In this document: piece by piece, positions 42,928 to 58,807 of the stretch
Numbering within the stretch: position 1 is the first letter of the stretch
Layout of the letters: the number at the start of each line of letters is the position of its first letter
Virus record (IMG/VR): IMGVR_UViG_3300042691_055965
Span: 1-64,000 of that record
Length of the DNA stretch: 64,000 bases
Reading direction: 5' to 3' (one strand)
Notes under the pieces: model-generated
What the model saw: only the letters and a program-made list of their open reading frames with translations
Database searches by the model: none
What the model was told of the DNA's origin: nothing
Made by a program: the position numbers and the translations under genes

Positions 42928-44064
42928 ATGGCAAATAAAAAAATATCAGAATTACCATACATACCAGAATCACAAATTTCAGGGAATACTTTAGTACCTT
43001 TGGTTACTTATTATTCTGCCACGACAGGTGATACTGTTCATACGTATGTTTCAGATTTACAAGATTATTTATTAAGTGGGCAAACAATCACTGGCGGAAC
43101 TTATTCTGCAGGTACTGCCACTTTTACAAATAGTAGTGGTGGTACATTTGATGTTACTGGTTTTACAAGTGGTACTAATTTTGCAAATACTGATTTAACC
43201 TTTACAGGAAATAGAACACATAACACAAATAACAATTATTTGTGGTTACAAACAAATGGAACAACAAGTGGTTCTTCAATCTATATGGATTCCACAAATT
43301 GGATAGACGTAGGATTTAGTAATTCGATTTCTGTTGGTAATTTTACAAGATGGGAACCATCAATAGTAACTCACTACTACCAAACAATCGATAGATTAAA
43401 TTTAAAAAGCACGGAAACCGTTATCAATGAAACGGGTATCGATGTTGATTTTAGAGTTGAAAGTGACACAAATCCAAATATGTTATTTGTAGATGCAAGT
43501 ACAAACAGAGTGGGAATAGGTAAAAGTAACCCAACTGTGGAATTAGATATAAGTGGAGATACTACAAATTCAGGATTATTAAAATCAACTTCAATTTCAG
43601 CAACAACAGTTTCTGCAACCACAATAGTTTTAAGTGGTAGTGATATAACCTCATCTTGGACATCATATGTACCAACATGGTCATCAAATGGTATAACACA
43701 ACCAACCATAGGTGACGGTTCGATTACGGGAGCATACAAAGTTATTGGTAAAACGTGTTTTTATAGAGGTAAGTTACTTTTTGGAACAACAACATCAGGA
43801 GGGTCGGGAGCATGGGAAATTTCTTTACCTTTTACCGCCGCATCAGCAGACGGAGTTCAATTACCTGTTTCAATTTTGGATCAGGGTATTGATTGGTATC
43901 AAGGGTTAATGAATGGTTCTTACGGAGGTTTTACAACTAAAAGTTCAATACTCGCCCCATCAACATTATCCATAGGTAAAAGCTCAGGTTTGGATGCAAC
44001 TTTACCATTCACTTGGGGTAATAATGATTATTTTGTTTGGAATGGTTCTTACGAAATTGCGTAA
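42928..44064 (+). CDS. Tail fibre protein with receptor-binding-type tip
   Basis: MANKKISELP start; DFRVESD..LFVDASTNRVGIG; C-terminal WTSYVPTW..GAYKVIGKTCF..ISLPF. Confidence 0.7.
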   Translation: MANKKISELPYIPESQISGNTLVPLVTYYSATTGDTVHTYVSDLQDYLLSGQTITGGTYSAGTATFTNSSGGTFDVTGFTSGTNFANTDLTFTGNRTHNTNNNYLWLQTNGTTSGSSIYMDSTNWIDVGFSNSISVGNFTRWEPSIVTHYYQTIDRLNLKSTETVINETGIDVDFRVESDTNPNMLFVDASTNRVGIGKSNPTVELDISGDTTNSGLLKSTSISATTVSATTIVLSGSDITSSWTSYVPTWSSNGITQPTIGDGSITGAYKVIGKTCFYRGKLLFGTTTSGGSGAWEISLPFTAASADGVQLPVSILDQGIDWYQGLMNGSYGGFTTKSSILAPSTLSIGKSSGLDATLPFTWGNNDYFVWNGSYEIA

Positions 44065-44528
44065 ATCCTTTCTTTACTGCCAACAATTTGTTTGTACCAT
44101 TTACCCTTTTCATCTAACCACACATACGGATTTTCGGGATTTTCTATCCACCCATGTTTAGAATAATAATCCAAATCTTTTCGTAATAAATTTGCTCTAT
44201 GGGATGAATGAAATTCTTCATTTTCTAACCAATCGGGTAAAACAAATTCACCTTCAATTCTTTCATATTCCATAGTGTTTTTGAAACCACGCTCAACCCA
44301 CACATCGATGCAATCGTTATAGTATTGTTTTAGTGCATTTACATAAGGACGCCACATTACAGAACAAGGATGATTTAACCATCCCTTGTATGGTTTTCCA
44401 TCTTTTCGAAGTCTTCCTGTGATAGCGGATATAATTTGATATGCTTCGACACGTTGTTTACCCAAACGTTTGTTGTCTAAAGATTCTAAAGATTTTCTGA
44501 AATCGGAATATGGAAGGAATGTTTGCAT
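44049..44528 (-). CDS. MSMEG_6728-like / pyrimidine dimer DNA glycosylase (endonuclease V-like) family protein
   Basis: MQTFLP..LDNKRLGKQRVEAYQI, W.NHP..MW, SHRANLLRKD. Confidence 0.8.
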   Translation of the reverse strand: MQTFLPYSDFRKSLESLDNKRLGKQRVEAYQIISAITGRLRKDGKPYKGWLNHPCSVMWRPYVNALKQYYNDCIDVWVERGFKNTMEYERIEGEFVLPDWLENEEFHSSHRANLLRKDLDYYSKHGWIENPENPYVWLDEKGKWYKQIVGSKERIYAIS

Positions 44529-44566: not shown

Positions 44567-45232
44567 TTATTTTTTATTTTTCTTACTCATATATTTACCT
44601 AATTTCCATCCATTACTTAAATAAAAATTAATTTCATTAGGGTTTACCATTTTATTGTCCGTACCTTTAGTCATACACTTTTTACCATATACTGAATTTT
44701 TTTCCCCAACACCCGTACCTTTTTTCATTTCACTTAATTTTTTCTTTGTTTCATCGGTGTGTTTTTTTCCTTTCCAATCATAAAAATATTTTTTATCTCT
44801 TCTACCATCAAGATATTGTTGTTTATTCGCTTTACTTAATTTTTCTGAAAATTGTTTTCTATATTCGTCATCTTTCATTTTTTCTAAAAAGACTTCATTA
44901 CCCCGTTTACAGGTTTTTACCATATGGTTTTTATCAATGAATCCACCGCCCCCACCTAATTGTAGGTTCATACAAAGTTTTTCAGAAATCAACTGTTGAT
45001 TGACAATTTCTTTTTCTCTTTTTTTTAGAATTTCTCTGTTTTCACAAAACTCAATAATTTCTTTGATGTGATTTTCTTTTCCATGATAGTTTAATGAACG
45101 CCATAATCTTTTACCACTACCAAGATAACCATCGTTCAGTGTGTTGGTACTGTGCATACCAATATAATATTTGTTATTCAACAAACAAGTTGTTTTATAA
45201 ATGTAGTGATATTTTTTTTGTAGTCTCGCCAT
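44567..45232 (-). mobile_element. Free-standing GIY-YIG (Seg-like) homing endonuclease with NUMOD3-type tail
   Basis: YIYKTTC..KYYIGMH..YLGSG; GKKHTDETKKKLSE..GEKNSVYGK; minus-strand TATTTAT at 45248-45254. Confidence 0.8.
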
Positions 45233-45280
45233 ATCTATATTTTATATATAAATATGGCGATAAGTACAAAACTTCCGGCG

Positions 45281-45697
45281 TGGAGGTGCGGAGAGTCGAA
45301 CTCCGGTCCATAACATCCTGTCAGATAAGGACTACACGTTTAGGTTAAGGTTTTTCATACCTTCCAAAATATTTGGTTCCTATTTTGACATTGTTACCAA
45401 CAACTGTGTCGAGTTCACTTTTGTTACGGTAGCACTCTGAACGAGACCGTTTGTTTCTTTTCGGGTAGAAACCACACCTTTGTAAAGACTTCTGTTGCTA
45501 GGTTATATGTCCACCGACCCCCCGTTTCCGTGCTTAACTTAAGCTACAGTAACTTCTTCAGTTGAAATTAAACCAACCACTGAAAGGTTTTCTAAAACGT
45601 CGCCATTTGCAACTTGAATCAGTTTTTAAGGAGATTAATTCAGTCCCCACGTGCCCTTATTCTTCAGCCAATGCCTGTCAAATCCAAAACCACCCCC
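45281..45697 (-). ncRNA. ssrA: tmRNA (417 nt), tag ANGDVLENLSVVGLISTEEVTVA*
   Basis: 5' GGGGGTG..TTGGATTTGAC pairs with 3' CACCTCC-A including the G3:U70 Ala determinant; T-arm CCGGAGTTCGACTCTCCG; tag ORF 45610..45539. Confidence 0.92.
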
Positions 45698-45722
45698 ATA
45701 TTTTCAAAGAACTTTCTTAATA

Positions 45723-45730
45723 CAAATATA
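45723..45730 (-). promoter_or_regulatory. Bacteroidota -7 element upstream of the tmRNA
   Basis: TATATTTG about 25 nt upstream of the mature 5' end. Confidence 0.6.
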
Positions 45731-45773
45731 TGTATAATATTAAATATATCCAAATTTAAGTATATTTATTTAT

Positions 45774-46952
45774 ATGAAAAAAAGAAGAAAATTATTTGAA
45801 GACGAATCAGAAGAACTATCTGACTTCAAAAAAATTCTTGCAATAAATAAAAAAAGGATTTCTTATAGGGATGTTGACTTTTATAACTCAGAAGGTAAAG
45901 ATTTTTCAGATATTATTGAAATAACCCAAGACGGATTATTATTCACTTTCGATGGTGGACTTGTTGAATACTTACAGTTTTTCTTTCCTGACGAATTTGA
46001 AGAAGGTTCTGATAGTTACTATGATGCTCAAATGTATGATTATATGTATGCCGGAAATTATGATTGGTATTCTGAATTTTCTGACAGATATTATGATGAT
46101 TGGGGTGAAGGATACATATTGGATGCCTTGAATGACAATCAAGTAGATAAATTGAAAGAAATTGTATCCATAGTTTCACCCACAATGGTTAATTATTTTT
46201 ATACTTCAGATCAGGGAAGAAAAAAAATAGGTAGAGATAGTAATGAAGTACAAAAAATTATTGATTTATTGACTACATTAGGTTTTGAAAGTTCTTTTCT
46301 AGATGCATACATTGAAGGAAGTGTTTCTGCGGTTAGAAACAGTGCTGCTGAATATATAAAAGACATATATTGTAATTGTTTAAAAGAAGCTATTGGGCTT
46401 GAAAACTACAGCCAAAGATACTGTTTTTGGAAATACGAATTATCTTGGGGTGATATAGTTTTGTTATATGCTAGATTTGGTTCACCAGAAGATAATCTTT
46501 ATGATTTACTTTTTGAAGCAATAAAAAAATCAAGCATAAAACATGCACCTGAACATTATGAAATTCAACATTATGTTTGGGACAATCAAAGATTTAGTGA
46601 AACTTTCAATCCAGAAATGGATAACATTTTAGATAATAAGTATGATGAAATTTTGGATGACGAAGAGTATTCAAAAGATTATATTGACGTATTAAATAAA
46701 GTTTCATTAATTGGTGGTACTGATAGTTGGATTAAATCGAAAAATGGTAAGTATCAAATTCGTATATTAAAGATAGACCCAAAAACTTTAAAAATAGATT
46801 ATTCTGTTTCTGACAAAAGTAACAATTGGAGTTCTAAAAAAGGAAGAACAACTATTGATGAGTTAATTAATTTGTTAAACTATGAAAGTTTGTTCCATCC
46901 TTCAGAATTTCGGGAACAGTTATTAAGGAAGTTTAGAAATTCTATCCTTTAA
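45774..46952 (+). CDS. Acidic hypothetical protein
   Basis: 392 aa; overlapping TATTTAT copies at 45763-45773. Confidence 0.75.
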   Translation: MKKRRKLFEDESEELSDFKKILAINKKRISYRDVDFYNSEGKDFSDIIEITQDGLLFTFDGGLVEYLQFFFPDEFEEGSDSYYDAQMYDYMYAGNYDWYSEFSDRYYDDWGEGYILDALNDNQVDKLKEIVSIVSPTMVNYFYTSDQGRKKIGRDSNEVQKIIDLLTTLGFESSFLDAYIEGSVSAVRNSAAEYIKDIYCNCLKEAIGLENYSQRYCFWKYELSWGDIVLLYARFGSPEDNLYDLLFEAIKKSSIKHAPEHYEIQHYVWDNQRFSETFNPEMDNILDNKYDEILDDEEYSKDYIDVLNKVSLIGGTDSWIKSKNGKYQIRILKIDPKTLKIDYSVSDKSNNWSSKKGRTTIDELINLLNYESLFHPSEFREQLLRKFRNSIL

Positions 46953-47975
46953 CATTTCATAAAGAGATATACAATCTTCATTTGAAATGAAAATTGATGT
47001 ATCCACATCCATTAAAATAATACCATCTTCATATTCAGACACATCAATTTCTTCGAACTGATGGTGGGTATTTTCATTTAATTCAATTAAAGAATTCATC
47101 ACGGTTTGATTGGTATATACTATTGGTTTATATTCATATTCATATTTTTTCAAACCAAGAACATCAACCATATTTAACCCTGCGGTTAATGCTTTTTGAA
47201 CATCTTCTAATGAAATAAATTCTTGTGATGAATGCATGTTATAATATCCACAGGACATATTGATGCAAGATACATTAATTTTCTTTTTTAATTGTGAAAT
47301 GTCCGTATAAGGGTGTGATTGAACAAGCATTTCATTTCCAAATGATTTTTCAATTGTTGAAATAACTTTTTCATAAAATTCACTATTTCTATCAAATAAT
47401 CGAACTCCCGAGCATATCTCGGTAATTAAATGATTTCCTGGTGCATCATATTGTGTGATATAACCAACATCTTGTAAAAAATCTTCATCACATTTTTGTG
47501 AACCGTGGCAACCTGTTTCTTCTGAAACAAAAAGTCCAACTTTTACTTTGTCCAATCTTTTTAAAAGTTCCAAACAAATAAAAATTCCACATTTGTCGTC
47601 ACCACCAATACCTGTTGGGTTTCCATGTACATCATATGCTTTCAAACAATCAACCTTTTCACTTGTAAAAACTTTTCCAAACGTTGCGGGTCTTGTAAGT
47701 TTTTCTTTTTTTACAATTATTTTATCAATTTTGTGGTGAACGGTGTCTGTGTGAGCAACAAACATTGGGTAGAACTCTCCGTCAGAAAGTTCACCCTTTG
47801 TTGCATATATATTCATCATATTGTCCCGATAATATTTGACACCGGGAATCGTATCAAGTTCATTACAAAGATATTCAACCATATCTTCTTCTTGATACGT
47901 TTTTGATGGAACTGAAAGAAGTTCTTTAAATTTTTCTAAATTGTACACAGATATATATTTTTTATAAAAATACAA
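46923..47975 (-). CDS. M28/M20-family metallo-aminopeptidase-like protein
   Basis: VAHTDTVH, IGGDDKCG, SEETGCHGS, YTD, GYYNMHS; true start may be GTG at 47948. Confidence 0.85.
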   Translation of the reverse strand: MYFYKKYISVYNLEKFKELLSVPSKTYQEEDMVEYLCNELDTIPGVKYYRDNMMNIYATKGELSDGEFYPMFVAHTDTVHHKIDKIIVKKEKLTRPATFGKVFTSEKVDCLKAYDVHGNPTGIGGDDKCGIFICLELLKRLDKVKVGLFVSEETGCHGSQKCDEDFLQDVGYITQYDAPGNHLITEICSGVRLFDRNSEFYEKVISTIEKSFGNEMLVQSHPYTDISQLKKKINVSCINMSCGYYNMHSSQEFISLEDVQKALTAGLNMVDVLGLKKYEYEYKPIVYTNQTVMNSLIELNENTHHQFEEIDVSEYEDGIILMDVDTSIFISNEDCISLYEMLKDRISKLP

Positions 47976-47996: not shown

Positions 47997-50045
47997 TTAT
48001 TGTGTTTTTATTTTTCTTTTTGTTGGTTTTTTTATTTTAATATCTGTTTTATCTTCTTTTTGATTGTATGATAAAATAAACTTGGAATTTTTTTCTGGGT
48101 TATCAGAAAGGATTTTATCTGTTATATAATCGTCAACCCATTTCTGAACCGTTCTTTTTAAAATCCTTGCTCCAAACCTTGTATCAGTTCCAATTGAAAT
48201 AATATGTTTTTTCAAGGTATCGTCAACCTCAACATCAAATTCAATTTTTCTAACTCTTTCATATACTTTTTCCAATTCCAAATCAATAATTTCCATCAAG
48301 TTATCTTCATCCAAATCTTTGAAATAAACAATATCATCAAATCTATTTATAAATTCTGGAACAAATCTTTTGAAAAGTTCTTTTTCCAACACTGATTTTA
48401 TTTCTTCTTCTTTTTGTTCAATTTTTGTTGCCGTCGAAAATCCTACACCTGTTCCAAATTGTTGAACGGCTCTTGTTCCAACATTTGATGTCATCAATAT
48501 AATACAATTTTTGAAATTGATTTTTCTTCCATGTCCATCGGTTAAAAATCCTTCATCGAGCATTTGCAAAAACACATTGAAGATTTCAGGGTGGGCTTTT
48601 TCAATTTCATCAAGTAAAATAACAGAATATGGTTTGTTTTTAATTTTATTCAAAAAAGGAGAACCATCATCATATCCAACATAACCTGGCGATGTTCCTG
48701 TTAATTTTGATGTTGATATTTTATCTGAAAATTCGCTCATGTCAAGTCTGATAAGAGCATCTTCTGAATTGAACATATGTTTTGCAAGTTGTTTTGCAAG
48801 TTCCGTTTTTCCAACACCGGAATTACCAATTAAAAGTCCACTGAATATCGGTCTTTTTGGATCGTTCAAACCAACTTTATTTCTTTGGATAGCTCTTGCA
48901 ATTTTTGCAATTGCATCATCTTGTCCAATAACCTTTTTATTAAGTGTGTCCTTTAATGTTTTAAGTTGTTCTGATTCATCAGTTGTGATTTTATTGATTG
49001 GAATTTTTGTCATAAGTGACACAACATCATAAACAATATCTTCTGTTACTTCTCTTTTGAAAAGGTTTCTATTTTTTTCAAATTCATCTTTTTCCTTTTC
49101 AAGCTCAAGAAGTATTTTTCTTTCTTTATCTCTTAAATTTGCTGCTTCTTCGTACTTTTGACTATTAATAACTCGAATTTTTTCCTTTTTAATGTCTTCT
49201 GCCTTTTTTTTCAAATCTTCGATAATTTCAGGTAATTTGATTTCAACTTGCGACCTGGCACCAACCTCATCGATTATATCAAACGCCTTGTCAGGAAATT
49301 CTCTATCTGTGATGTAACGATCAGCCAATTCAACACAAAGTTTTAATATGTCATCACTGTACTTTACCTTATGATAATCTTCATACCTTTCTTTTGTATT
49401 ATACAAGATTTCAAGTGTTTCTTCTTTTGTTGACGGATCTACCATTACCTTTTGAAACCTCCTTTCAAGTGCTCCGTCCTTTTCAATGTTTTTTCTATAT
49501 TCTTCAAGTGTTGTTGCTCCAATACATTGTAATTCACCACGGGACAGGGCTGGTTTGAAAATATTTGATGCATCCATTGTACCTGATGCGTTTCCTGCAC
49601 CAATCATTGTATGAATTTCATCGATGAAAATAATAATGTCAGGATTTGCATAAAGTTCTTCCATTATAACTTTCATTCTTTCTTCAAATTGTCCTCTGTA
49701 TTTTGTTCCTGCAACAACAGATGTCATGTCTAATGAAACAATTCTTTTATTTGCCAAATTTTGGGGACAATCACCTTCGAATATTTTCTTTGCAAGTCCT
49801 TCAATAATTGCTGTTTTTCCACAACCAGGTTCACCAAGAACGATTGGGTTGTTCTTTTTTCTTCTTGATAAAATCTGTGCAATTCTATTGATTTCGTTTT
49901 CTCTCCCAACAATCGGGTCTAGTTTTCCTTCTTCTGCTAGTAATATTAAATCTCTTGAAAAATTATCCAAAACGGGGGTTTTTGACGAACCTGTTGATTG
50001 TGATTTGTTTTTGGATTTTTCGTTGCTATCTGCTGAATCAATCAT
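47997..50045 (-). CDS. clpC: ClpC-like double AAA+ ATPase lacking the N-terminal Clp repeat domain
   Basis: Walker A GEPGCGKT and GNSGVGKT; Walker B IFIDEIH and ILLDEIEKAHP; UVR motif YEEAANLRD; GVGF ClpP-docking loop. Confidence 0.9.
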   Translation of the reverse strand: MIDSADSNEKSKNKSQSTGSSKTPVLDNFSRDLILLAEEGKLDPIVGRENEINRIAQILSRRKKNNPIVLGEPGCGKTAIIEGLAKKIFEGDCPQNLANKRIVSLDMTSVVAGTKYRGQFEERMKVIMEELYANPDIIIFIDEIHTMIGAGNASGTMDASNIFKPALSRGELQCIGATTLEEYRKNIEKDGALERRFQKVMVDPSTKEETLEILYNTKERYEDYHKVKYSDDILKLCVELADRYITDREFPDKAFDIIDEVGARSQVEIKLPEIIEDLKKKAEDIKKEKIRVINSQKYEEAANLRDKERKILLELEKEKDEFEKNRNLFKREVTEDIVYDVVSLMTKIPINKITTDESEQLKTLKDTLNKKVIGQDDAIAKIARAIQRNKVGLNDPKRPIFSGLLIGNSGVGKTELAKQLAKHMFNSEDALIRLDMSEFSDKISTSKLTGTSPGYVGYDDGSPFLNKIKNKPYSVILLDEIEKAHPEIFNVFLQMLDEGFLTDGHGRKINFKNCIILMTSNVGTRAVQQFGTGVGFSTATKIEQKEEEIKSVLEKELFKRFVPEFINRFDDIVYFKDLDEDNLMEIIDLELEKVYERVRKIEFDVEVDDTLKKHIISIGTDTRFGARILKRTVQKWVDDYITDKILSDNPEKNSKFILSYNQKEDKTDIKIKKPTKRKIKTQ

Positions 50046-55191: not shown

Positions 55192-56967
55192 ATGGCGTTA
55201 TCAAAAGAACAAGCACTATTAGAATATGCAAAATGTGTAAAGGACACACCCTACGCACTTAAAACATATTTGCAAACTTACGATAACACACAATCAAAAT
55301 ATGTTCCGTTAGAACTGTTTAATGATCAAGTAACACTTGTAAAAGATTACGATGAATGTGAAGAAAACATCGCACTTAAATATCGACAAGCAGGTGTATC
55401 AACAGTAACATCTGCATGGGCTTCCAAAAGACTTGTTTTTGCAAGAAAGGAAAAACCTGAAAAAATTCTTATAATCGCTAACAAATTGGACACGGCAGTC
55501 GAAATGGCAAACAAAGTTCGTGCGTTTGTTGATCAGTGGCCGAAATGGATGGGTGTAACATTTTCAAATGAAAAAAATTCACAAAGACACTTTAAATTAA
55601 CTAATGGGTGTGAAGTGAAGGCGGTTGCAACATCAAAAGATGCACTTCGTGGTTATACACCAACGATACTAATATTTGACGAAGCGGCGTACATTGATGC
55701 CGATGAAGATTTTTGGTCTGCGTGTATGGCGTCTTTATCAACAGGGGGTAAAGTTATTGTAATTTCAACACCAAACGGATTCGACCCAATTTACTACTCT
55801 ATATACAGTCAAGCAATCAAAGGAATGAATGACTTTAGAATAACAGAAATGTATTGGTATCGTGATCCACGATATTCAAAAGATTTAAAACTTATAAAAT
55901 GTGATGACATTGTTCACTATATGCTGAATAGAAGTGATTATAATGATAATGAAATCACATTAGACTATAGTCAAATAAAAGTTAGTGACAGAAATTTTCC
56001 TGAAATAAAAGAAAAAATTGAAAATGGTTATAAGGCATATAGTTCTTGGTTCGAGGCTATGGCTAAAAAACTTAAATTCGATAAGAGAAAAATTTCACAG
56101 GAATTAGAATGTAACTTTTTAGGTTCAGGGGATAATGTAATCCCACCTGAAACTATGAAAAAAATAAAAGAAAACCATATCAAAGAACCTGAAAATAAAT
56201 TTATGGGTGGTGCTCTTTGGCAATGGAAAGAACCAATTGCAGGACACCGATATATTATGGGTGTTGATGTATCAAGAGGTGATAGTGAAGATTTTAGTAC
56301 AATATCAGTGATTGATTTTGACAATAGGGAACAAGTATTAGAATACATGGGAAAAATTCCACCTGATGTACTTGCAGAAATCGCATATAAATGGGGAACT
56401 ATGTATAACGCCTTTATTGTTACCGATATAACGGGGGGTATGGGTGTTTCTACATCAAGAAAACTACAAGAACTAGGATATAGAAATTTATATGTTGATG
56501 GAGTAAATCCAGCAGATAAATGGAAGTGGAACCCTAAGGCACAAGATAAAATACCGGGAATTAATTTTAATGCAAAAAGAGTTTTAATTATACAAGCGTT
56601 TGAAGAAGCGTTAAGATATGACTTTTCTTTAAAATCACAAAGATTATTTAATGAACTAAATACGTTTGTATATGTGAATGGTAGACCTGATCACCAAAAA
56701 GGACAACATGATGACTTAATTATGTCTTTTGCAATGGCGATATATGTTGCTGAAACTTCTTTTGCACAATTGGAAAAAGCAACAGAACAAACTAAGGCAA
56801 TGATTGAATCTTGGCAAGTTGAATCAAAGGTTCATGCCGATCCAACAAGAAGTTTTAATCCAGGTATACCTGTTGATGTTTATGGTATGAACAATTTCCC
56901 AAAAAGTGGACCGACTAAAAGTGACTATGAAAACTATTTATGGTTATTCGGTAAAGGAAGGGTTTAG
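55192..56967 (+). CDS. terL: Terminase large subunit (T4 gp17-like)
   Basis: KYRQAGVST Walker A, ILIFDEAA Walker B, VISTPNG, nuclease GVDVSRG and HDDLIM. Confidence 0.95.
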   Translation: MALSKEQALLEYAKCVKDTPYALKTYLQTYDNTQSKYVPLELFNDQVTLVKDYDECEENIALKYRQAGVSTVTSAWASKRLVFARKEKPEKILIIANKLDTAVEMANKVRAFVDQWPKWMGVTFSNEKNSQRHFKLTNGCEVKAVATSKDALRGYTPTILIFDEAAYIDADEDFWSACMASLSTGGKVIVISTPNGFDPIYYSIYSQAIKGMNDFRITEMYWYRDPRYSKDLKLIKCDDIVHYMLNRSDYNDNEITLDYSQIKVSDRNFPEIKEKIENGYKAYSSWFEAMAKKLKFDKRKISQELECNFLGSGDNVIPPETMKKIKENHIKEPENKFMGGALWQWKEPIAGHRYIMGVDVSRGDSEDFSTISVIDFDNREQVLEYMGKIPPDVLAEIAYKWGTMYNAFIVTDITGGMGVSTSRKLQELGYRNLYVDGVNPADKWKWNPKAQDKIPGINFNAKRVLIIQAFEEALRYDFSLKSQRLFNELNTFVYVNGRPDHQKGQHDDLIMSFAMAIYVAETSFAQLEKATEQTKAMIESWQVESKVHADPTRSFNPGIPVDVYGMNNFPKSGPTKSDYENYLWLFGKGRV

Positions 56968-57007
56968 TTTATAGGTAAACCTATTTAATTTTTTAAAAAA
57001 GAAAATA

Positions 57008-58807
57008 ATGGCACAAGACAAATATACAATATGGCAAAGGTTGAGTAAGACATTCGGTCCAAGTGCTACACTCGATCAACAATCACCCGTATTCAAGTTC
57101 GATAAAAAAGAACTATTAAAAACAACAGATAAACAAGAATATGAAGTTGAAAAACTTCAAGCACAACAAACTGTTTATTTGGGTAAACAATGGCAAAAGG
57201 TTGAATCTAACCTTTACCAACAAGCAGTATATTATGAACCAACAAGAATGGCTTCATATTATGACTATGAATCAATGGAATATACACCTGAAATATCGGC
57301 AGCTCTTGATGTTTATGCTGAAGAATCTACAACACCCGATAAAGATGGTGATATATTAAAAGTTTATTCTGAATCAAAAAGAATTAAATCTGTTTTGACT
57401 GATTTATTTGTCACCAGAATGGATATTAATACAAATCTCCCAATGTGGACAAGAAACACTTGTAAATTTGGTGACAACTTTATTTATTTGAAATTGGATC
57501 CAGAAAAAGGTGTTGTAGGATGTCAACAATTACCGAATATCCAAATTGAAAGATTGGAAAAAGGGATGCGTTTTCAACCTGACAAGTATTCACAAGAAAT
57601 GGAAAACGATGCATTGAAGTTTGTATGGAAAGAAAAAAACATGGAATTCAATCTTTGGGAAGTAGGACATTTCAGAATATTAGGTGATGACAGAAAACTT
57701 CCTTACGGAACATCTATGTTAGAAAAAGCAAGAAGAATTTGGAAACAATTATTACTTTCTGAAGATGCTATGTTAATATACAGGGTGTCAAGAGCACCTG
57801 AAAGAAGAGTGTTTAAGGTATTTGTTGGAAACATGGATGATAAAGATGTTGACCCATATGTACAAAGAGTTGCAAACAAATTCAAACGAGATCAGATTGC
57901 TGATCCCAAAACAGGTAACGTTGATATGAGGTACAATCAGTTGGCAGTCGATCAAGACTTCTTTATTCCTGTTAGAGATCCGGCACAAACAAACCCAATA
58001 GAGACATTACCTGGTGGTACAAACTTGGCGGAAATCGCAGATATTGAATATATCCAAAAGAAATTGGTTACCGCACTTCGTGTACCAAAGGCTTATTTAG
58101 GTTTTGAAGAAGCGGTGGGTGATGGTAAAAACTTATCATTACTTGATATTAGATTTGCAAGAACAATCAATAGAATCCAAAAATCAATGTTGGCGGAATT
58201 GAATAAAATTGCGATTATACATTTATTTTTGTTAGGGTTTGAAGATGAATTAACAAATTTCAGTCTTGGACTTCACAACCCATCCAAACAAGCAGATTTA
58301 CTTGGTGTGGAAGTATGGAAAGAAAAAATTACGTTATACAAAGACGCTGTTGCACCGATTCAAGATTCAGTTGCTCCTGTTTCAGCGTCATGGGCTAAGA
58401 AACACATACTTGGATTTAGTGATGAAGAAATTAGACTTGACTTACAACAACAGAGGGTTGAAAGAGCGGTTGCTGCTGAACTTGGTAAAACTGCAGAAGT
58501 TATTACTAAAACAGGATTATTTGATAATATCGATAATTTATATGGTAAAAAGGATTCTGAACCTGCAGGGGCACCTGCTGAAGGTGGAGGAATGCCTCCT
58601 GAACCAGGAGGTGGGGCACCTCCACCACCGAGTGAACCACCAGCAGGTGGTGAAGCCGCAGTAACACCTGAAAGATTTGTTAAAGATGGGTTAGATTTGA
58701 TACTAGAAGAAACGTTATTTTATGGAAATGATACACTAGATTTGTCCAAAGGAAAAAATTCTCTTGTAGAAATAAATGAAAAACTTAACGATTTAATCAA
58801 CAAGTAA
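57008..58807 (+). CDS. Portal protein (T4 gp20-like)
   Basis: YGTSMLEKARRIWKQL.L.EDAMLIYRVSRAPERRVF, ETLPGG.NL.EIADIEY..KKL..AL.VP. Confidence 0.95.
   Translation: MAQDKYTIWQRLSKTFGPSATLDQQSPVFKFDKKELLKTTDKQEYEVEKLQAQQTVYLGKQWQKVESNLYQQAVYYEPTRMASYYDYESMEYTPEISAALDVYAEESTTPDKDGDILKVYSESKRIKSVLTDLFVTRMDINTNLPMWTRNTCKFGDNFIYLKLDPEKGVVGCQQLPNIQIERLEKGMRFQPDKYSQEMENDALKFVWKEKNMEFNLWEVGHFRILGDDRKLPYGTSMLEKARRIWKQLLLSEDAMLIYRVSRAPERRVFKVFVGNMDDKDVDPYVQRVANKFKRDQIADPKTGNVDMRYNQLAVDQDFFIPVRDPAQTNPIETLPGGTNLAEIADIEYIQKKLVTALRVPKAYLGFEEAVGDGKNLSLLDIRFARTINRIQKSMLAELNKIAIIHLFLLGFEDELTNFSLGLHNPSKQADLLGVEVWKEKITLYKDAVAPIQDSVAPVSASWAKKHILGFSDEEIRLDLQQQRVERAVAAELGKTAEVITKTGLFDNIDNLYGKKDSEPAGAPAEGGGMPPEPGGGAPPPPSEPPAGGEAAVTPERFVKDGLDLILEETLFYGNDTLDLSKGKNSLVEINEKLNDLINK

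What the first reader, a model, noticed from the sequence alone, without database searches (positions are those of the whole stretch)
45281..45697. Phage tmRNA with a long, non-canonical degradation tag
Seen: 417-nt tmRNA, CCA not encoded; predicted tag (A)ANGDVLENLSVVGLISTEEVTVA, 23 codons, ending VTVA. Established: bacterial tags are usually ~10 aa and end in a YALAA-like ClpX degron. Inference: the tag may avoid host ClpXP or be read by another protease, so rescued ribosomes are freed while products go to a phage-chosen fate. The resume codon is inferred from context.
Basis: partly seen in the sequence, partly recalled or inferred. Interest (0 to 1): 0.62.

Follow-up and report, generated by a model that had tools for sequence, protein, structure and literature searches.

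The report
Jumbo-phage tmRNA with private long tag
A large freshwater phage carries its own ribosome-rescue RNA (tmRNA) that adds an unusual, conserved 21-residue tail ending in VTVA, and the gene always sits beside a phage-encoded ClpC unfoldase and a peptidase, which suggests, but does not prove, a phage-owned protein-disposal route.

Summary
The tmRNA is real. It lies at window 45281-45697 on the minus strand (Rfam RF00023, 97 bits, E 1e-36) and keeps the G3:U70 pair. Its T-arm, P2 and PK1 pair in all 30 relatives aligned, with compensatory changes. The GGC two codons downstream keeps GG in every sequence, with A at -4 in 66/66 sequences, which is the known frame-setting position. The tag is therefore (A)GDVLENLSVVGLISTEEVTVA, 21 codons.

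Synonymous codon turnover shows the peptide itself is under selection. No tmRNA with this tag turned up in representatives of 185,579 bacterial species. Seventy sampled Bacteroidota tags are 8-10 residues ending in [LM]AA; ARAGORN read two more as non-standard.

The gene sits inside a T4-like jumbo phage of about 230-300 kb. In 57 of 57 independently found loci it lies downstream of a phage ClpC that lacks the N-domain but keeps the ClpP-docking VGF loop, together with an M20/M42-like peptidase. A private degron for the phage ClpC is the best hypothesis but is untested. I rate this a new variant of a known kind.

The parts
45281..45697 (-). One-piece tmRNA (ssrA) gene, 417 nt up to the discriminator A. 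CCA is not encoded; the next bases are CGC.
   Evidence: Rfam RF00023 97.3 bits, E 1e-36. ARAGORN. Homologues in 177 viral loci. Contigs from four lake or river metatranscriptome runs lie only within 45285-45693.
45691..45697 (-). 5' strand of the acceptor stem (GGGGGUG), which pairs with 45282-45288 (CACCUCC). G3:U70 is the alanine identity pair.
   Evidence: Sequence. G3:U70 is kept in 30/30 aligned relatives, and pair 5-412 switches G-C to C-G.
45615..45648 (-). Pseudoknot 1 (GGGGA/UCUCC and UGAAUUA/UGAUUCA).
   Evidence: Stem 1 pairs in 30/30 at all five positions, with G-C, A-U and C-G alternating at the first pair. Stem 2 pairs in 29-30 of 30.
45608..45608 (-). Frame-setting adenosine at -4 from the resume codon, the counterpart of E. 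coli A86.
   Evidence: A in 66/66 unique family sequences, with a pyrimidine at -5 in 66/66. The role of A86 and its 4-nt ruler is described in PMC2481249.
45602..45604 (-). Most likely resume codon, GGC (Gly), 10 nt after PK1.
   Evidence: GG is 66/66 and the third base is C in 65 and A in 1 (synonymous). The PK1-to-GGC spacer is 10-12 nt. The two codons upstream vary freely: T/I/L/S/A and T/I/Y/D/N.
45539..45604 (-). Tag reading frame of 21 codons plus TAA, encoding GDVLENLSVVGLISTEEVTVA*.
   Evidence: The same length and frame hold in 33 of 34 unique relatives found through ClpC. Summed entropy by codon position is 14.7, 5.8 and 18.0. V3, L4, G11, L12 and A21 are invariant residues written with 2-4 synonymous codons each. 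The other two frames carry stops in 39/39 and 35/39 sequences.
45556..45586 (-). Helix-5-like hairpin inside the tag frame. Codons 8-10 pair with codons 13-16, with the loop at G11-L12.
   Evidence: Rfam aligns its helix 5 here. A hairpin is predicted at this place in most tag types (20 of the 22 folded), with compensatory changes between types.
45532..45544 (-). Terminal hairpin GCUUA-AGU-UAAGC that holds the stop codon.
   Evidence: Sequence. GCCUA/UAGGC variants compensate in relatives. The helix shifts in one subgroup.
44567..45232 (-). Free-standing homing endonuclease immediately 3' of the tmRNA.
   Evidence: phrog_314 E 2.8e-35 and the NUMOD3 motif. TIGR01453 group I intron endonuclease, below its cut-off. 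All 20 family loci that have it lack an encoded CCA, and none of the 96 CCA-encoding loci have it.
45774..46952 (+). Conserved 392-aa protein of unknown function between the peptidase and the tmRNA.
   Evidence: Homologues at 24-55% identity in most family loci. AlphaFold2 pLDDT 88.7. No Pfam, PHROG or NCBIfam match. No fold match: Foldseek E above 0.1 and VIA Z at most 5.5.
46923..47975 (-). M20/M42-like (PepT-like) metallopeptidase.
   Evidence: Peptidase_M42 E 8e-6 and Peptidase_M20 E 1e-4. phrog_4191 peptidase E 2.7e-40. Weak PepT-like match. Present in 57/57 pattern-found loci.
47997..50045 (-). Phage ClpC unfoldase without the N-terminal domain, 682 aa.
   Evidence: S. aureus ClpC (6em9) 682 bits, aligned to its residues 145-807. 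Both Walker sites, the pore loops KYRG and GYVG, the M-domain/UVR region and a VGF ClpP-docking loop are present. No Clp_N anywhere in the record. Bacteroidota ClpC homologues are 50-55% identical and lie in open frames of about 830-920 aa.

Best explanation
This is a working tmRNA encoded by a T4-like freshwater jumbo phage.

Shown. The RNA has every structural hallmark of tmRNA, and those hallmarks are kept by compensatory changes across a large phage family. Its tag frame is a conserved 21-codon open frame that starts at GGC and ends in VTVA, and the peptide itself is under purifying selection. The gene is embedded among phage structural and packaging genes. It always lies 1.8-7.4 kb downstream of a phage ClpC that lacks its N-domain, on the same strand, together with an M20/M42-like peptidase.

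Inferred. The phage encodes no SmpB, ClpP or CCA-adding enzyme, so the RNA would be matured, given CCA, charged with alanine and delivered to stalled ribosomes by host enzymes and host SmpB. It would free ribosomes that stall during infection, for example on cleaved host mRNAs. It would add A-G[DN]VL..[ML]...GL....[EQ]VTVA to the unfinished chains.

Most likely fate of the tagged chains (hypothesis). The tail is a degron matched to the neighbouring phage ClpC. That ClpC has lost the adaptor-binding N-domain but kept the VGF loop, so it could dock on host ClpP. The peptidase would then trim the released peptides to amino acids. Together this would be a phage-owned rescue-and-recycle module.
For: Gene and structure.

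Resume codon: A at -4 in 66/66, GG in 66/66, a 10-12 nt spacer after PK1 and non-conserved upstream codons. The A86 rule is taken from PMC2481249.

Peptide-level selection: synonymous turnover at invariant residues, lowest variability at the second codon position, and stops in the other frames.

Phage context: virion proteins at 33-36 kb, T4-type terminase and portal at 55-59 kb, no tRNAs and no integrase next to the gene.

Among bacterial genomes there were only two matches, and neither is a tmRNA. The 70 Bacteroidota tags are 8-10 aa, and 68 end in [LM]AA.

Linkage: 57 of 57 loci found through the tag alone, each with at least 5 kb of upstream sequence, carry ClpC on the same strand plus the peptidase. 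This holds even where ClpC is only 49-60% identical and the peptidase gene is inverted.

ClpC anatomy. No Clp_N, ClpP, Lon, SmpB or PolyA_pol.

Expression: contigs from four lake or river metatranscriptome runs lie only inside the gene.
Against: No experiment or structure links the tag to ClpC. Conserved gene order within one phage family can be inherited rather than functional. More distant huge phages with a ClpC 49-55% identical do not keep the pairing: LR756508.1 has its tmRNA about 360 kb away from its ClpC, and LR745206.1 has no tmRNA above the cut-off.

From my own knowledge, N-domain-less ClpC is poorly active in Bacillus without MecA, so the phage protein may need an unknown partner. 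The host is unidentified, so its own tag and protease set are unknown.

Codons 8-10 and 13-16 are also constrained by an RNA hairpin, so part of the apparent peptide conservation may be an RNA effect. The metatranscriptome data are assembled contigs at 90% identity or more, not reads. They cannot prove transcription or define the RNA ends.
Confidence: 0.5

Rival explanations
1. The tmRNA works as described, but the tail is read by host proteases (ClpXP, ClpAP/ClpCP, Lon or a tail-specific protease). It may even copy the tag of an unsampled host lineage. The neighbouring phage ClpC and peptidase would then serve other purposes, and the linkage would be inherited gene order.
For: The tag ends in a small hydrophobic residue with a free carboxylate, as canonical tags do (PMC4131195). 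From my own knowledge, the engineered ssrA variant ending LVA is degraded in E. coli; PMC9382460 lists it among the variants in use. Phage tmRNAs are usually thought to be captured from hosts (PMC9004378). Distant huge phages with ClpC do not keep tmRNA next to it.
Against: No tmRNA with this tag pattern occurs in representatives of 185,579 species. The candidate host phylum uses 8-10 aa [LM]AA tags, and the phage family profile matches those bacterial tmRNAs almost only in the tRNA-like 3' part. ClpC linkage is 57/57 across deep divergence and local rearrangement.
Confidence: 0.3
2. The RNA serves only to release ribosomes. The tail would be no degron at all. It could instead mark, aggregate or relocate the truncated chains, or be conserved mainly because the tag region must fold as RNA.
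For: A hairpin with compensatory changes occupies codons 8-16. Ribosome release, not tagging, is the function needed in several phage assays (PMC2481249).
Against: The ends of the tag lie outside the hairpin and show amino-acid conservation with free synonymous change: V3 is written GTT, GTA or GTG, L4 is written TTA, CTA, CTT or TTG, and A21 is written GCT, GCC or GCG. Tag length is fixed at 21 codons in all but one variant.
Confidence: 0.12
3. One reading: translation resumes at GCA (45610-45608) and gives a 23-codon tag, ANGDVLENLSVVGLISTEEVTVA.
For: In this window GCA is preceded by AGUU, which resembles E. coli's AGUC, and Rfam aligns it to the consensus GCA. No in-frame stop lies between GCA and GGC in any relative.
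Against: G at that position occurs in 1 of 66 sequences. The A four bases upstream of it is not conserved (A 26, C 9, T 6, G 5 of 46). The two codons vary as non-coding sequence would. GCA lies only 4 nt after PK1, whereas E. coli has 12 nt (PMC2481249).
Confidence: 0.08
4. The gene is host DNA: an ssrA at a prophage border or an attachment-site remnant, not a phage function. IMG/VR labels this record 'provirus'.
For: The record is classed as a provirus. Mobile elements often integrate into ssrA (PMC9004378). Decayed copies of the tmRNA 3' end occur downstream in some relatives.
Against: The gene lies 45 kb inside the record, between virion genes and terminase/portal. It is full length and structurally intact. 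It is present at the same place in more than 170 viral contigs, including linear records of 274-304 kb rated 93-100% complete. No integrase is adjacent.
Confidence: 0.02

Closest known systems
Bacterial one-piece tmRNA (ssrA, Rfam RF00023) with the canonical ANDENYALAA-type ClpXP degron
   Same: It shares the tRNA-like domain with G3:U70, PK1, an A four bases before the resume codon, a short open frame closed by a stop in a hairpin, and downstream pseudoknots. It presumably depends on SmpB in the same way.
   Different: The tag is 21 codons rather than about 8-14. It ends VTVA rather than [LVM]AA. A helix-5-like hairpin lies inside the frame. The gene is phage-encoded, and CCA is not encoded in this copy.
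Phage-encoded tmRNAs (mycobacteriophage Bxz1 group, Bacillus phage G, Melnitz and pelagimyophages, huge phages)
   Same: A tmRNA carried by a large lytic-type phage without its own SmpB. A role in keeping ribosomes free, or in recycling host protein, has been proposed before (PMC9004378, PMC7162821, PMC4131195).
   Different: No similar sequence exists among 50,697 deposited phage genomes. Melnitz-type RNAs are two-piece and resemble alphaproteobacterial tmRNAs. Here the tag matches no known bacterial tag, and the gene is tied to a phage ClpC and a peptidase.
Mollicutes ssrA tags read by Lon (Mesoplasma florum mf-ssrA)
   Same: A long tag whose determinants are not the ClpX LAA motif. This is the precedent that a lineage can re-aim the tag at a different AAA+ protease (PMC9382460).
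   Different: That tag ends NYAFA and belongs to bacteria that lack an active ClpXP. There is no sequence similarity to it that I could defend, and no Lon is encoded by the phage.
ClpC of Firmicutes, Actinobacteria and Bacteroidota
   Same: The neighbouring phage protein aligns over both AAA modules, the M-domain and the VGF loop, with about 50-55% identity.
   Different: It lacks the roughly 145-residue N-domain, which binds adaptors such as MecA and phospho-arginine substrates.

Membership tests
tmRNA (RF00023) | The covariance model scores above the curated threshold over the full length. | tested here: met
   97.3 bits against 47, model positions 1-374 of 374.
tmRNA (RF00023) | A tRNA-like domain with an acceptor stem carrying G3:U70, plus a T-arm. 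| tested here: met
   G3:U70 in 30/30 relatives. All 5 T-stem pairs are paired in 30/30, with double compensatory changes.
tmRNA (RF00023) | A resume codon preceded by a conserved A at -4, a short distance after PK1. | tested here: met
Met for GGC: A at -4 in 66/66 and a 10-12 nt spacer.
tmRNA (RF00023) | A tag frame that is the most conserved reading frame and ends at a stop codon. | tested here: met
   The comparative criterion follows PMC4131195.
tmRNA (RF00023) | An encoded 3' CCA, or CCA added after transcription. | tested here: inconclusive
   Not encoded here (the bases are CGC). Encoded in 109 of 155 relatives. Addition by a host enzyme is assumed. No PolyA_pol family gene was found in the record.
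tmRNA (RF00023) | Works with SmpB and is charged with alanine. | not testable with these tools
   No SmpB in the record or in five near-complete relatives. Use of the host protein is inferred.
Canonical ssrA degron read by ClpX | A C-terminal [LVM]-A-A carboxylate. | tested here: not met
   T-V-A in all 39 unique tag sequences.
Canonical ssrA degron read by ClpX | Degraded by ClpXP. | not testable with these tools
   Needs a degradation assay.
Mollicutes-type Lon tag | A long tag ending in NYAFA, in organisms that lack an active ClpXP. | tested here: not met
   The length is comparable, but the end is EVTVA. The host is unknown.
ClpC (class I Clp/Hsp100 unfoldase) | Two AAA+ modules, an M-domain and a ClpP-docking (I/L/V)GF loop. 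| tested here: met
   Alignment to S. aureus ClpC residues 145-807. The VGF loop is present.
ClpC (class I Clp/Hsp100 unfoldase) | An N-terminal Clp_N repeat domain. | tested here: not met
   The protein starts at the equivalent of residue 145. No Clp_N in the record.

The most novel reading that the evidence does not exclude
A widespread family of freshwater jumbo phages runs a private proteolysis channel. Its own tmRNA writes a degron that only its own adaptor-free ClpC recognises, working on host ClpP. Chains from ribosomes stalled during takeover would then be destroyed and recycled without competing with, or being controlled by, the host's ClpXP/SspB system. This would be the first natural orthogonal tmRNA-tag/unfoldase pair carried by a virus.
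Probability: 0.3. Interest if true: 0.8.

Novelty: new variant of a known kind. Interest (0 to 1): 0.55.

Why it matters
Phage tmRNAs have been listed in genome surveys, but what their tags do has not been worked out, and ARAGORN could not identify this one.

This study fixes the tag of a large, environmentally common phage family by comparative analysis. The tag has no bacterial counterpart in the collections searched. It is genetically tied to a trimmed ClpC and a peptidase.

That gives a concrete, testable model for why a virus would carry a ribosome-rescue RNA: to clear stalled ribosomes and route the products to a disposal path of its own choosing. If the tag-ClpC match holds, it would also offer a compact orthogonal degron system for synthetic biology, in the way the Mesoplasma Lon tag is used now.

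Tried and rejected
- **ARAGORN's tag.** EKKQTVSFRVLP is flagged 'Tag not identified' and lies in a region that varies by non-triplet indels among relatives.
- **ARAGORN's short tag in relatives.** ATEQVTVA or ATEEVTVA is only the end of the conserved frame, because upstream codons show peptide-level conservation.
- My first degenerate DNA pattern was one N short and found nothing (error found). The corrected pattern was used.
- **The two bacterial pattern hits.** Both come from Chitinophagaceae genomes assembled from metagenomes and are not tmRNAs. ARAGORN, nhmmer and Rfam were all negative.
- **Deposited phage genomes.** blastn of the locus against them found no match.
- **Host identification.** The portal is only 37-39% identical to Microcystis and Flavobacterium phages. 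ClpC is about equally similar to Bacteroidota homologues (50-55% identical) and to the Firmicutes ClpC structures that top the PDB search. The host stays open.
- **'Moraphages' (PMC12619734).** They share a ClpA-like ATPase and a peptidase as core genes, but this record has no HSP70, so I do not claim membership.
- **The 392-aa neighbour.** The model is confident but has no fold match, so I assign it no role.
- **Genes sought and not found.** Phage ClpP, SmpB, Lon, Clp_N and a CCA-adding enzyme.
- **Natural proteins of the phage ending like the tag.** One 85-aa ORF (genome 80652-80909) ends LTVA, which is within chance.
- **Promoter and terminator scan.** One weak sigma-70-like site 28 nt upstream, no better than in shuffled sequence.
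- **Whole-RNA MFE fold.** z = -0.33, uninformative for a pseudoknotted RNA.
- **Complex prediction.** Not used. The tag is shorter than the tool's 30-residue minimum, and I do not claim a tested interaction.
Full report

ARAGORN finds one tmRNA in the window, on the minus strand at 45280-45697. It is also the only tRNA-like gene in the whole 229,188-bp virus record. Rfam's tmRNA model RF00023 matches 45278-45697 end to end at 97.3 bits against a 47-bit threshold, E 1e-36.

Read on the minus strand, the RNA begins GGGGGUG and ends CACCUCC-A. This gives a 7-bp acceptor stem with the G3:U70 pair that marks alanine acceptors.

After pseudoknot 1 the sequence reads AGUU GCA AAU GGC GAC GUU UUA ... 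GUU ACU GUA GCU UAA. ARAGORN reports a different peptide, EKKQTVSFRVLP at gene positions 236-274. It labels that call 'Tag not identified', and the stretch lies in the pseudoknot 2-3 region, which differs by non-triplet indels among relatives. I reject it.

**2. Where is it?**

The record is an IMG/VR virus sequence of about 31% G+C, estimated 76% complete. Annotated genes around the tmRNA:

| Window coordinates | Strand | Feature |
|---|---|---|
| 33-36 kb | + | Tail-fibre-like and virion structural proteins |
| 44049-44528 | - | Pyrimidine-dimer glycosylase |
| 44567-45232 | - | Homing endonuclease, directly 3' of the tmRNA |
| 45774-46952 | + | Conserved 392-aa protein without any family match |
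| 46923-47975 | - | M20/M42-like peptidase |
| 47997-50045 | - | Two-ring Clp ATPase |
| 55192-58807 | + | T4-type large terminase and portal |

The tmRNA is therefore inside a T4-like jumbo-phage genome and not at a prophage edge.

The nearest cultured portals belong to Microcystis phage Mel-JY01 (39% identity) and a Flavobacterium phage (37%). No deposited phage genome has a similar tmRNA.

**3. Relatives**

Searching IMG/VR with the Clp ATPase gave 80 loci. nhmmer with the window's tmRNA found homologous tmRNAs in most of them, 34 of them unique.

My first attempt at this pattern was one N short and found nothing. In all, 177 loci hold the RNA. They include linear records of 274-304 kb rated 93-100% complete.

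In an alignment of 30 members, the T-stem, the CACGU/ACGUG part of P2 and stem 1 of PK1 are paired in 30/30, and stem 2 of PK1 is paired in 29-30 of 30. There are double compensatory changes, for example C-G to G-C and G-C to A-U in the T-stem, and G-C, A-U and C-G at the first PK1 pair. G3:U70 is invariant. The rest of the acceptor stem comes in two complementary versions, GGGGGUG/CACCUCC and GGGCCUA/UAGGUCC. The RNA is clearly under selection as a tmRNA.

**4. The tag and its start**

From GGC the frame is 21 codons in 33 of the 34 unique relatives found through ClpC; one adds a terminal Tyr. It is also 21 codons in all 172 loci that match the pattern.

Among 39 distinct tag sequences, variability is lowest at second codon positions. 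Summed entropy is 14.7, 5.8 and 18.0 bits for positions 1, 2 and 3. Several invariant residues are written with several codons:

| Residue | Codons seen |
|---|---|
| V3 | GTT, GTA, GTG |
| L4 | TTA, CTA, CTT, TTG |
| G11 | GGA, GGT |
| L12 (one Phe, TTT) | TTA, CTT, CTA |
| A21 | GCT, GCC, GCG |

The other two frames contain stops in 39/39 and 35/39 sequences. The pattern search forces some of these residues, but the 34 sequences found through ClpC show the same behaviour. This is the comparative criterion used to settle difficult tags, such as that of Carsonella (PMC4131195).

The start needs correction. In E. coli the frame is set by A86, four bases before the resume codon. That base is nearly universal, the distance from it to the codon is critical, and the distance from PK1 is not (PMC2481249).

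In this family, A at -4 from GGC is 66/66, the base at -5 is a pyrimidine in 66/66, and GG is 66/66, with one GGA. The PK1-to-GGC spacer varies between 10 and 12 nt.

Elsewhere that codon is ACA, ATA, TTA or TCA and the next one is ACT, TAC, GAC, AAT, ATT, ATC or AAC. The base four before it is not conserved. No in-frame stop separates the two candidates, so the earlier start is not excluded outright, but I put it at about 0.08.

The tag is therefore most likely (A)GDVLENLSVVGLISTEEVTVA. The family consensus is G-[DN]-V-L-x-[KN]-[ML]-x3-G-L-[ILV]-x3-[EQ]-V-T-V-A.

One caveat applies. Codons 8-10 pair with codons 13-16 in a hairpin whose loop is the G11-L12 codons, with compensatory changes between tag types. 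Rfam aligns its helix 5 there. The correlated residue changes in the middle of the tag are therefore probably driven by the RNA. The peptide-level argument rests on the two ends and on G11-L12.

**5. Is the tag unusual?**

The same pattern scanned over one genome for each of 185,579 bacterial and archaeal species gave two matches, both in Chitinophagaceae genomes assembled from metagenomes. Neither is a tmRNA by ARAGORN, nhmmer or Rfam.

I sampled 151 Bacteroidota genomes, a plausible host phylum, and read 70 of their tmRNAs. Sixty-eight tags are 8-10 residues ending [LM]AA, with resume positions at 90-103. ARAGORN read the other two as non-standard. The phage family profile matches these bacterial tmRNAs almost only in the tRNA-like 3' part.

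The tag is therefore non-canonical and, in the collections searched, specific to this phage family. Two limits apply. The pattern is strict, so a diverged bacterial version could be missed. And long or odd tags do exist: Mollicutes use a longer tag ending NYAFA that Lon reads (PMC9382460), and one Carsonella tag ends in Lys.

From my own knowledge, a C-terminal VA does not by itself predict escape from ClpXP, because the engineered LVA variant is degraded efficiently in E. coli. PMC9382460 lists LVA among the variants in use.

**6. The neighbours**

The Clp ATPase is a ClpC. It scores 682 bits against S. aureus ClpC and aligns to residues 145-807. It has both nucleotide sites, the pore loops KYRG and GYVG, the M-domain/UVR stretch and a VGF tripeptide at the ClpP-docking loop. 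The whole N-domain is missing, and no Clp_N domain is encoded elsewhere in the record. Bacteroidota homologues are 50-55% identical and lie in open frames of about 830-920 aa.

No ClpP and no SmpB are encoded in this record or in five near-complete relatives. No Lon and no CCA-adding enzyme are encoded in this record. Any ClpP, SmpB, AlaRS or CCA-adding activity must come from the host.

Linkage is complete. Among loci found through the tag alone, 57 of 57 with at least 5 kb of upstream sequence have ClpC on the same strand plus the peptidase. ClpC identity in these runs from 49% to 95%, and in the more divergent group the peptidase gene is inverted. Across all loci with at least 9 kb upstream (74 of 74 carry ClpC), the gap from ClpC to the tmRNA is 1.8-7.4 kb, median 2.4 kb.

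The 392-aa protein is present in 64 of those 74 loci. It folds confidently (pLDDT 88.7) but matches no solved fold, so I give it no role.

The pairing is not kept in more distant huge phages that have a ClpC 49-55% identical. LR756508.1 has its tmRNA about 360 kb from its ClpC, and LR745206.1 has none above threshold.

**7. Expression**

The locus is present in DNA runs from many freshwater studies. I laid four lake or river metatranscriptome runs, from four studies, on 45100-45900. Their contigs lie only within 45285-45693. The longest is 376 nt at depth 257, and coverage on both flanks is zero.

This fits a stable RNA of about 400 nt. The limits are that these are assembled contigs matched at 90% identity or more. 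The flanks also diverge more than the gene does among relatives, so their absence from the data is weak evidence, and the RNA ends cannot be read from contigs.

**8. How it most likely works**

Shown: a structurally intact, selected tmRNA; a 21-codon selected tag; phage context; obligatory linkage to a ClpC without its N-domain and to a peptidase; and absence of phage SmpB and ClpP.

Inferred: host enzymes mature and charge the RNA, and host SmpB delivers it. It frees ribosomes that stall during infection and appends the tail.

Hypothesis: the tail is a degron for the phage ClpC docked on host ClpP, and the peptidase finishes the recycling. The earlier suggestion that phage tmRNA might tag host proteins for amino-acid recycling (PMC9004378) gains a concrete gene set here.

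I put the whole statement at 0.5. The RNA, tag and resume-codon part stands at about 0.85, and the ClpC pairing at about 0.35-0.4.

The rivals are these:
- Host proteases read the tag and the linkage is inherited gene order (0.3).
- The RNA only rescues ribosomes and the tail is not a degron (0.12).
- The gene is a host remnant (0.02).

**9. Novelty**

Phage tmRNAs are known, in about 2.3% of phage genomes (PMC9004378), and re-aimed long tags are known in Mollicutes. What is new here is a family-wide tag that no program identified, the lack of any bacterial counterpart for it, and its fixed association with a truncated ClpC and a peptidase. A paper on large aquatic 'moraphages' lists a ClpA-like ATPase and a peptidase among core genes but never mentions tmRNA, and I could not show that this record belongs to that lineage. 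I rate the finding a new variant of a known kind, interest 0.55.

Noticed in passing
window 44567-45232 (-) and the tmRNA 3' end at 45278-45281; family loci, e.g. L101, L105, L158: A free-standing homing endonuclease (phrog_314, NUMOD3) sits within 50 nt of the tmRNA 3' end. All 20 family loci that carry it lack an encoded CCA, and none of the 96 CCA-encoding loci have it. The element therefore appears to have inserted right after the discriminator, at the cost of the encoded CCA.
   Followed up: partly
L014:17009-17095 (also L078, L042, L021): A decayed second copy of the last ~90 nt of the tmRNA lies about 2.2 kb downstream of the intact gene. Two opposite-strand ORFs (282 and 384 aa) lie between the copies. 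It looks like the scar of a cassette that inserted into the 3' end of ssrA.
   Followed up: partly
alignment A2 (30 family tmRNAs); e.g. L044 against the window and L003: The acceptor/T-arm type, the tag type and the pseudoknot 2-4 type are combined differently in different family members. This indicates recombination between tmRNA modules.
   Followed up: no
window 45556-45586 (-): The hairpin that Rfam aligns as helix 5 lies inside the tag frame rather than at its end. The UAA in its loop is out of frame in this window. A second hairpin (45532-45544) holds the real stop codon.
   Followed up: partly
L283:1501-1944 (LR756508.1 92434-92880, a 484-kb uncultured phage): Another huge phage has a tmRNA (72 bits). 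Its frame after AACU|GGC runs 36 codons and ends KPAAV*. ARAGORN offers only an unidentified guess there too. Long tags that programs cannot read may be common in huge-phage tmRNAs. This is a single sequence and was not verified.
   Followed up: no
window 45774-46952 (+): A conserved 392-aa protein sits between the peptidase and the tmRNA in most family loci. The AlphaFold2 model is confident (pLDDT 88.7, mixed helical plus a C-terminal beta domain). It has no Pfam, PHROG or NCBIfam match and no solved-structure match.
   Followed up: yes
window 47997-50045 (-): The phage ClpC lacks the adaptor-binding and phospho-arginine-binding N-domain but keeps the M-domain and the VGF loop. No ClpP is encoded in six family genomes, so the phage protein presumably uses the host's ClpP.
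   Followed up: yes
G000 genome coordinates 80652-80909 (+), outside the window: An 85-aa hydrophobic ORF ends ...SKILTVA, which resembles the tag's end. One such ORF among 324 is within chance.
   Followed up: no
L050:2407-2492, L051, L071: Some relatives carry an 86-nt tRNA-Gly(UCC) about 6.5 kb upstream of the tmRNA. This record has no tRNA at all.
   Followed up: no
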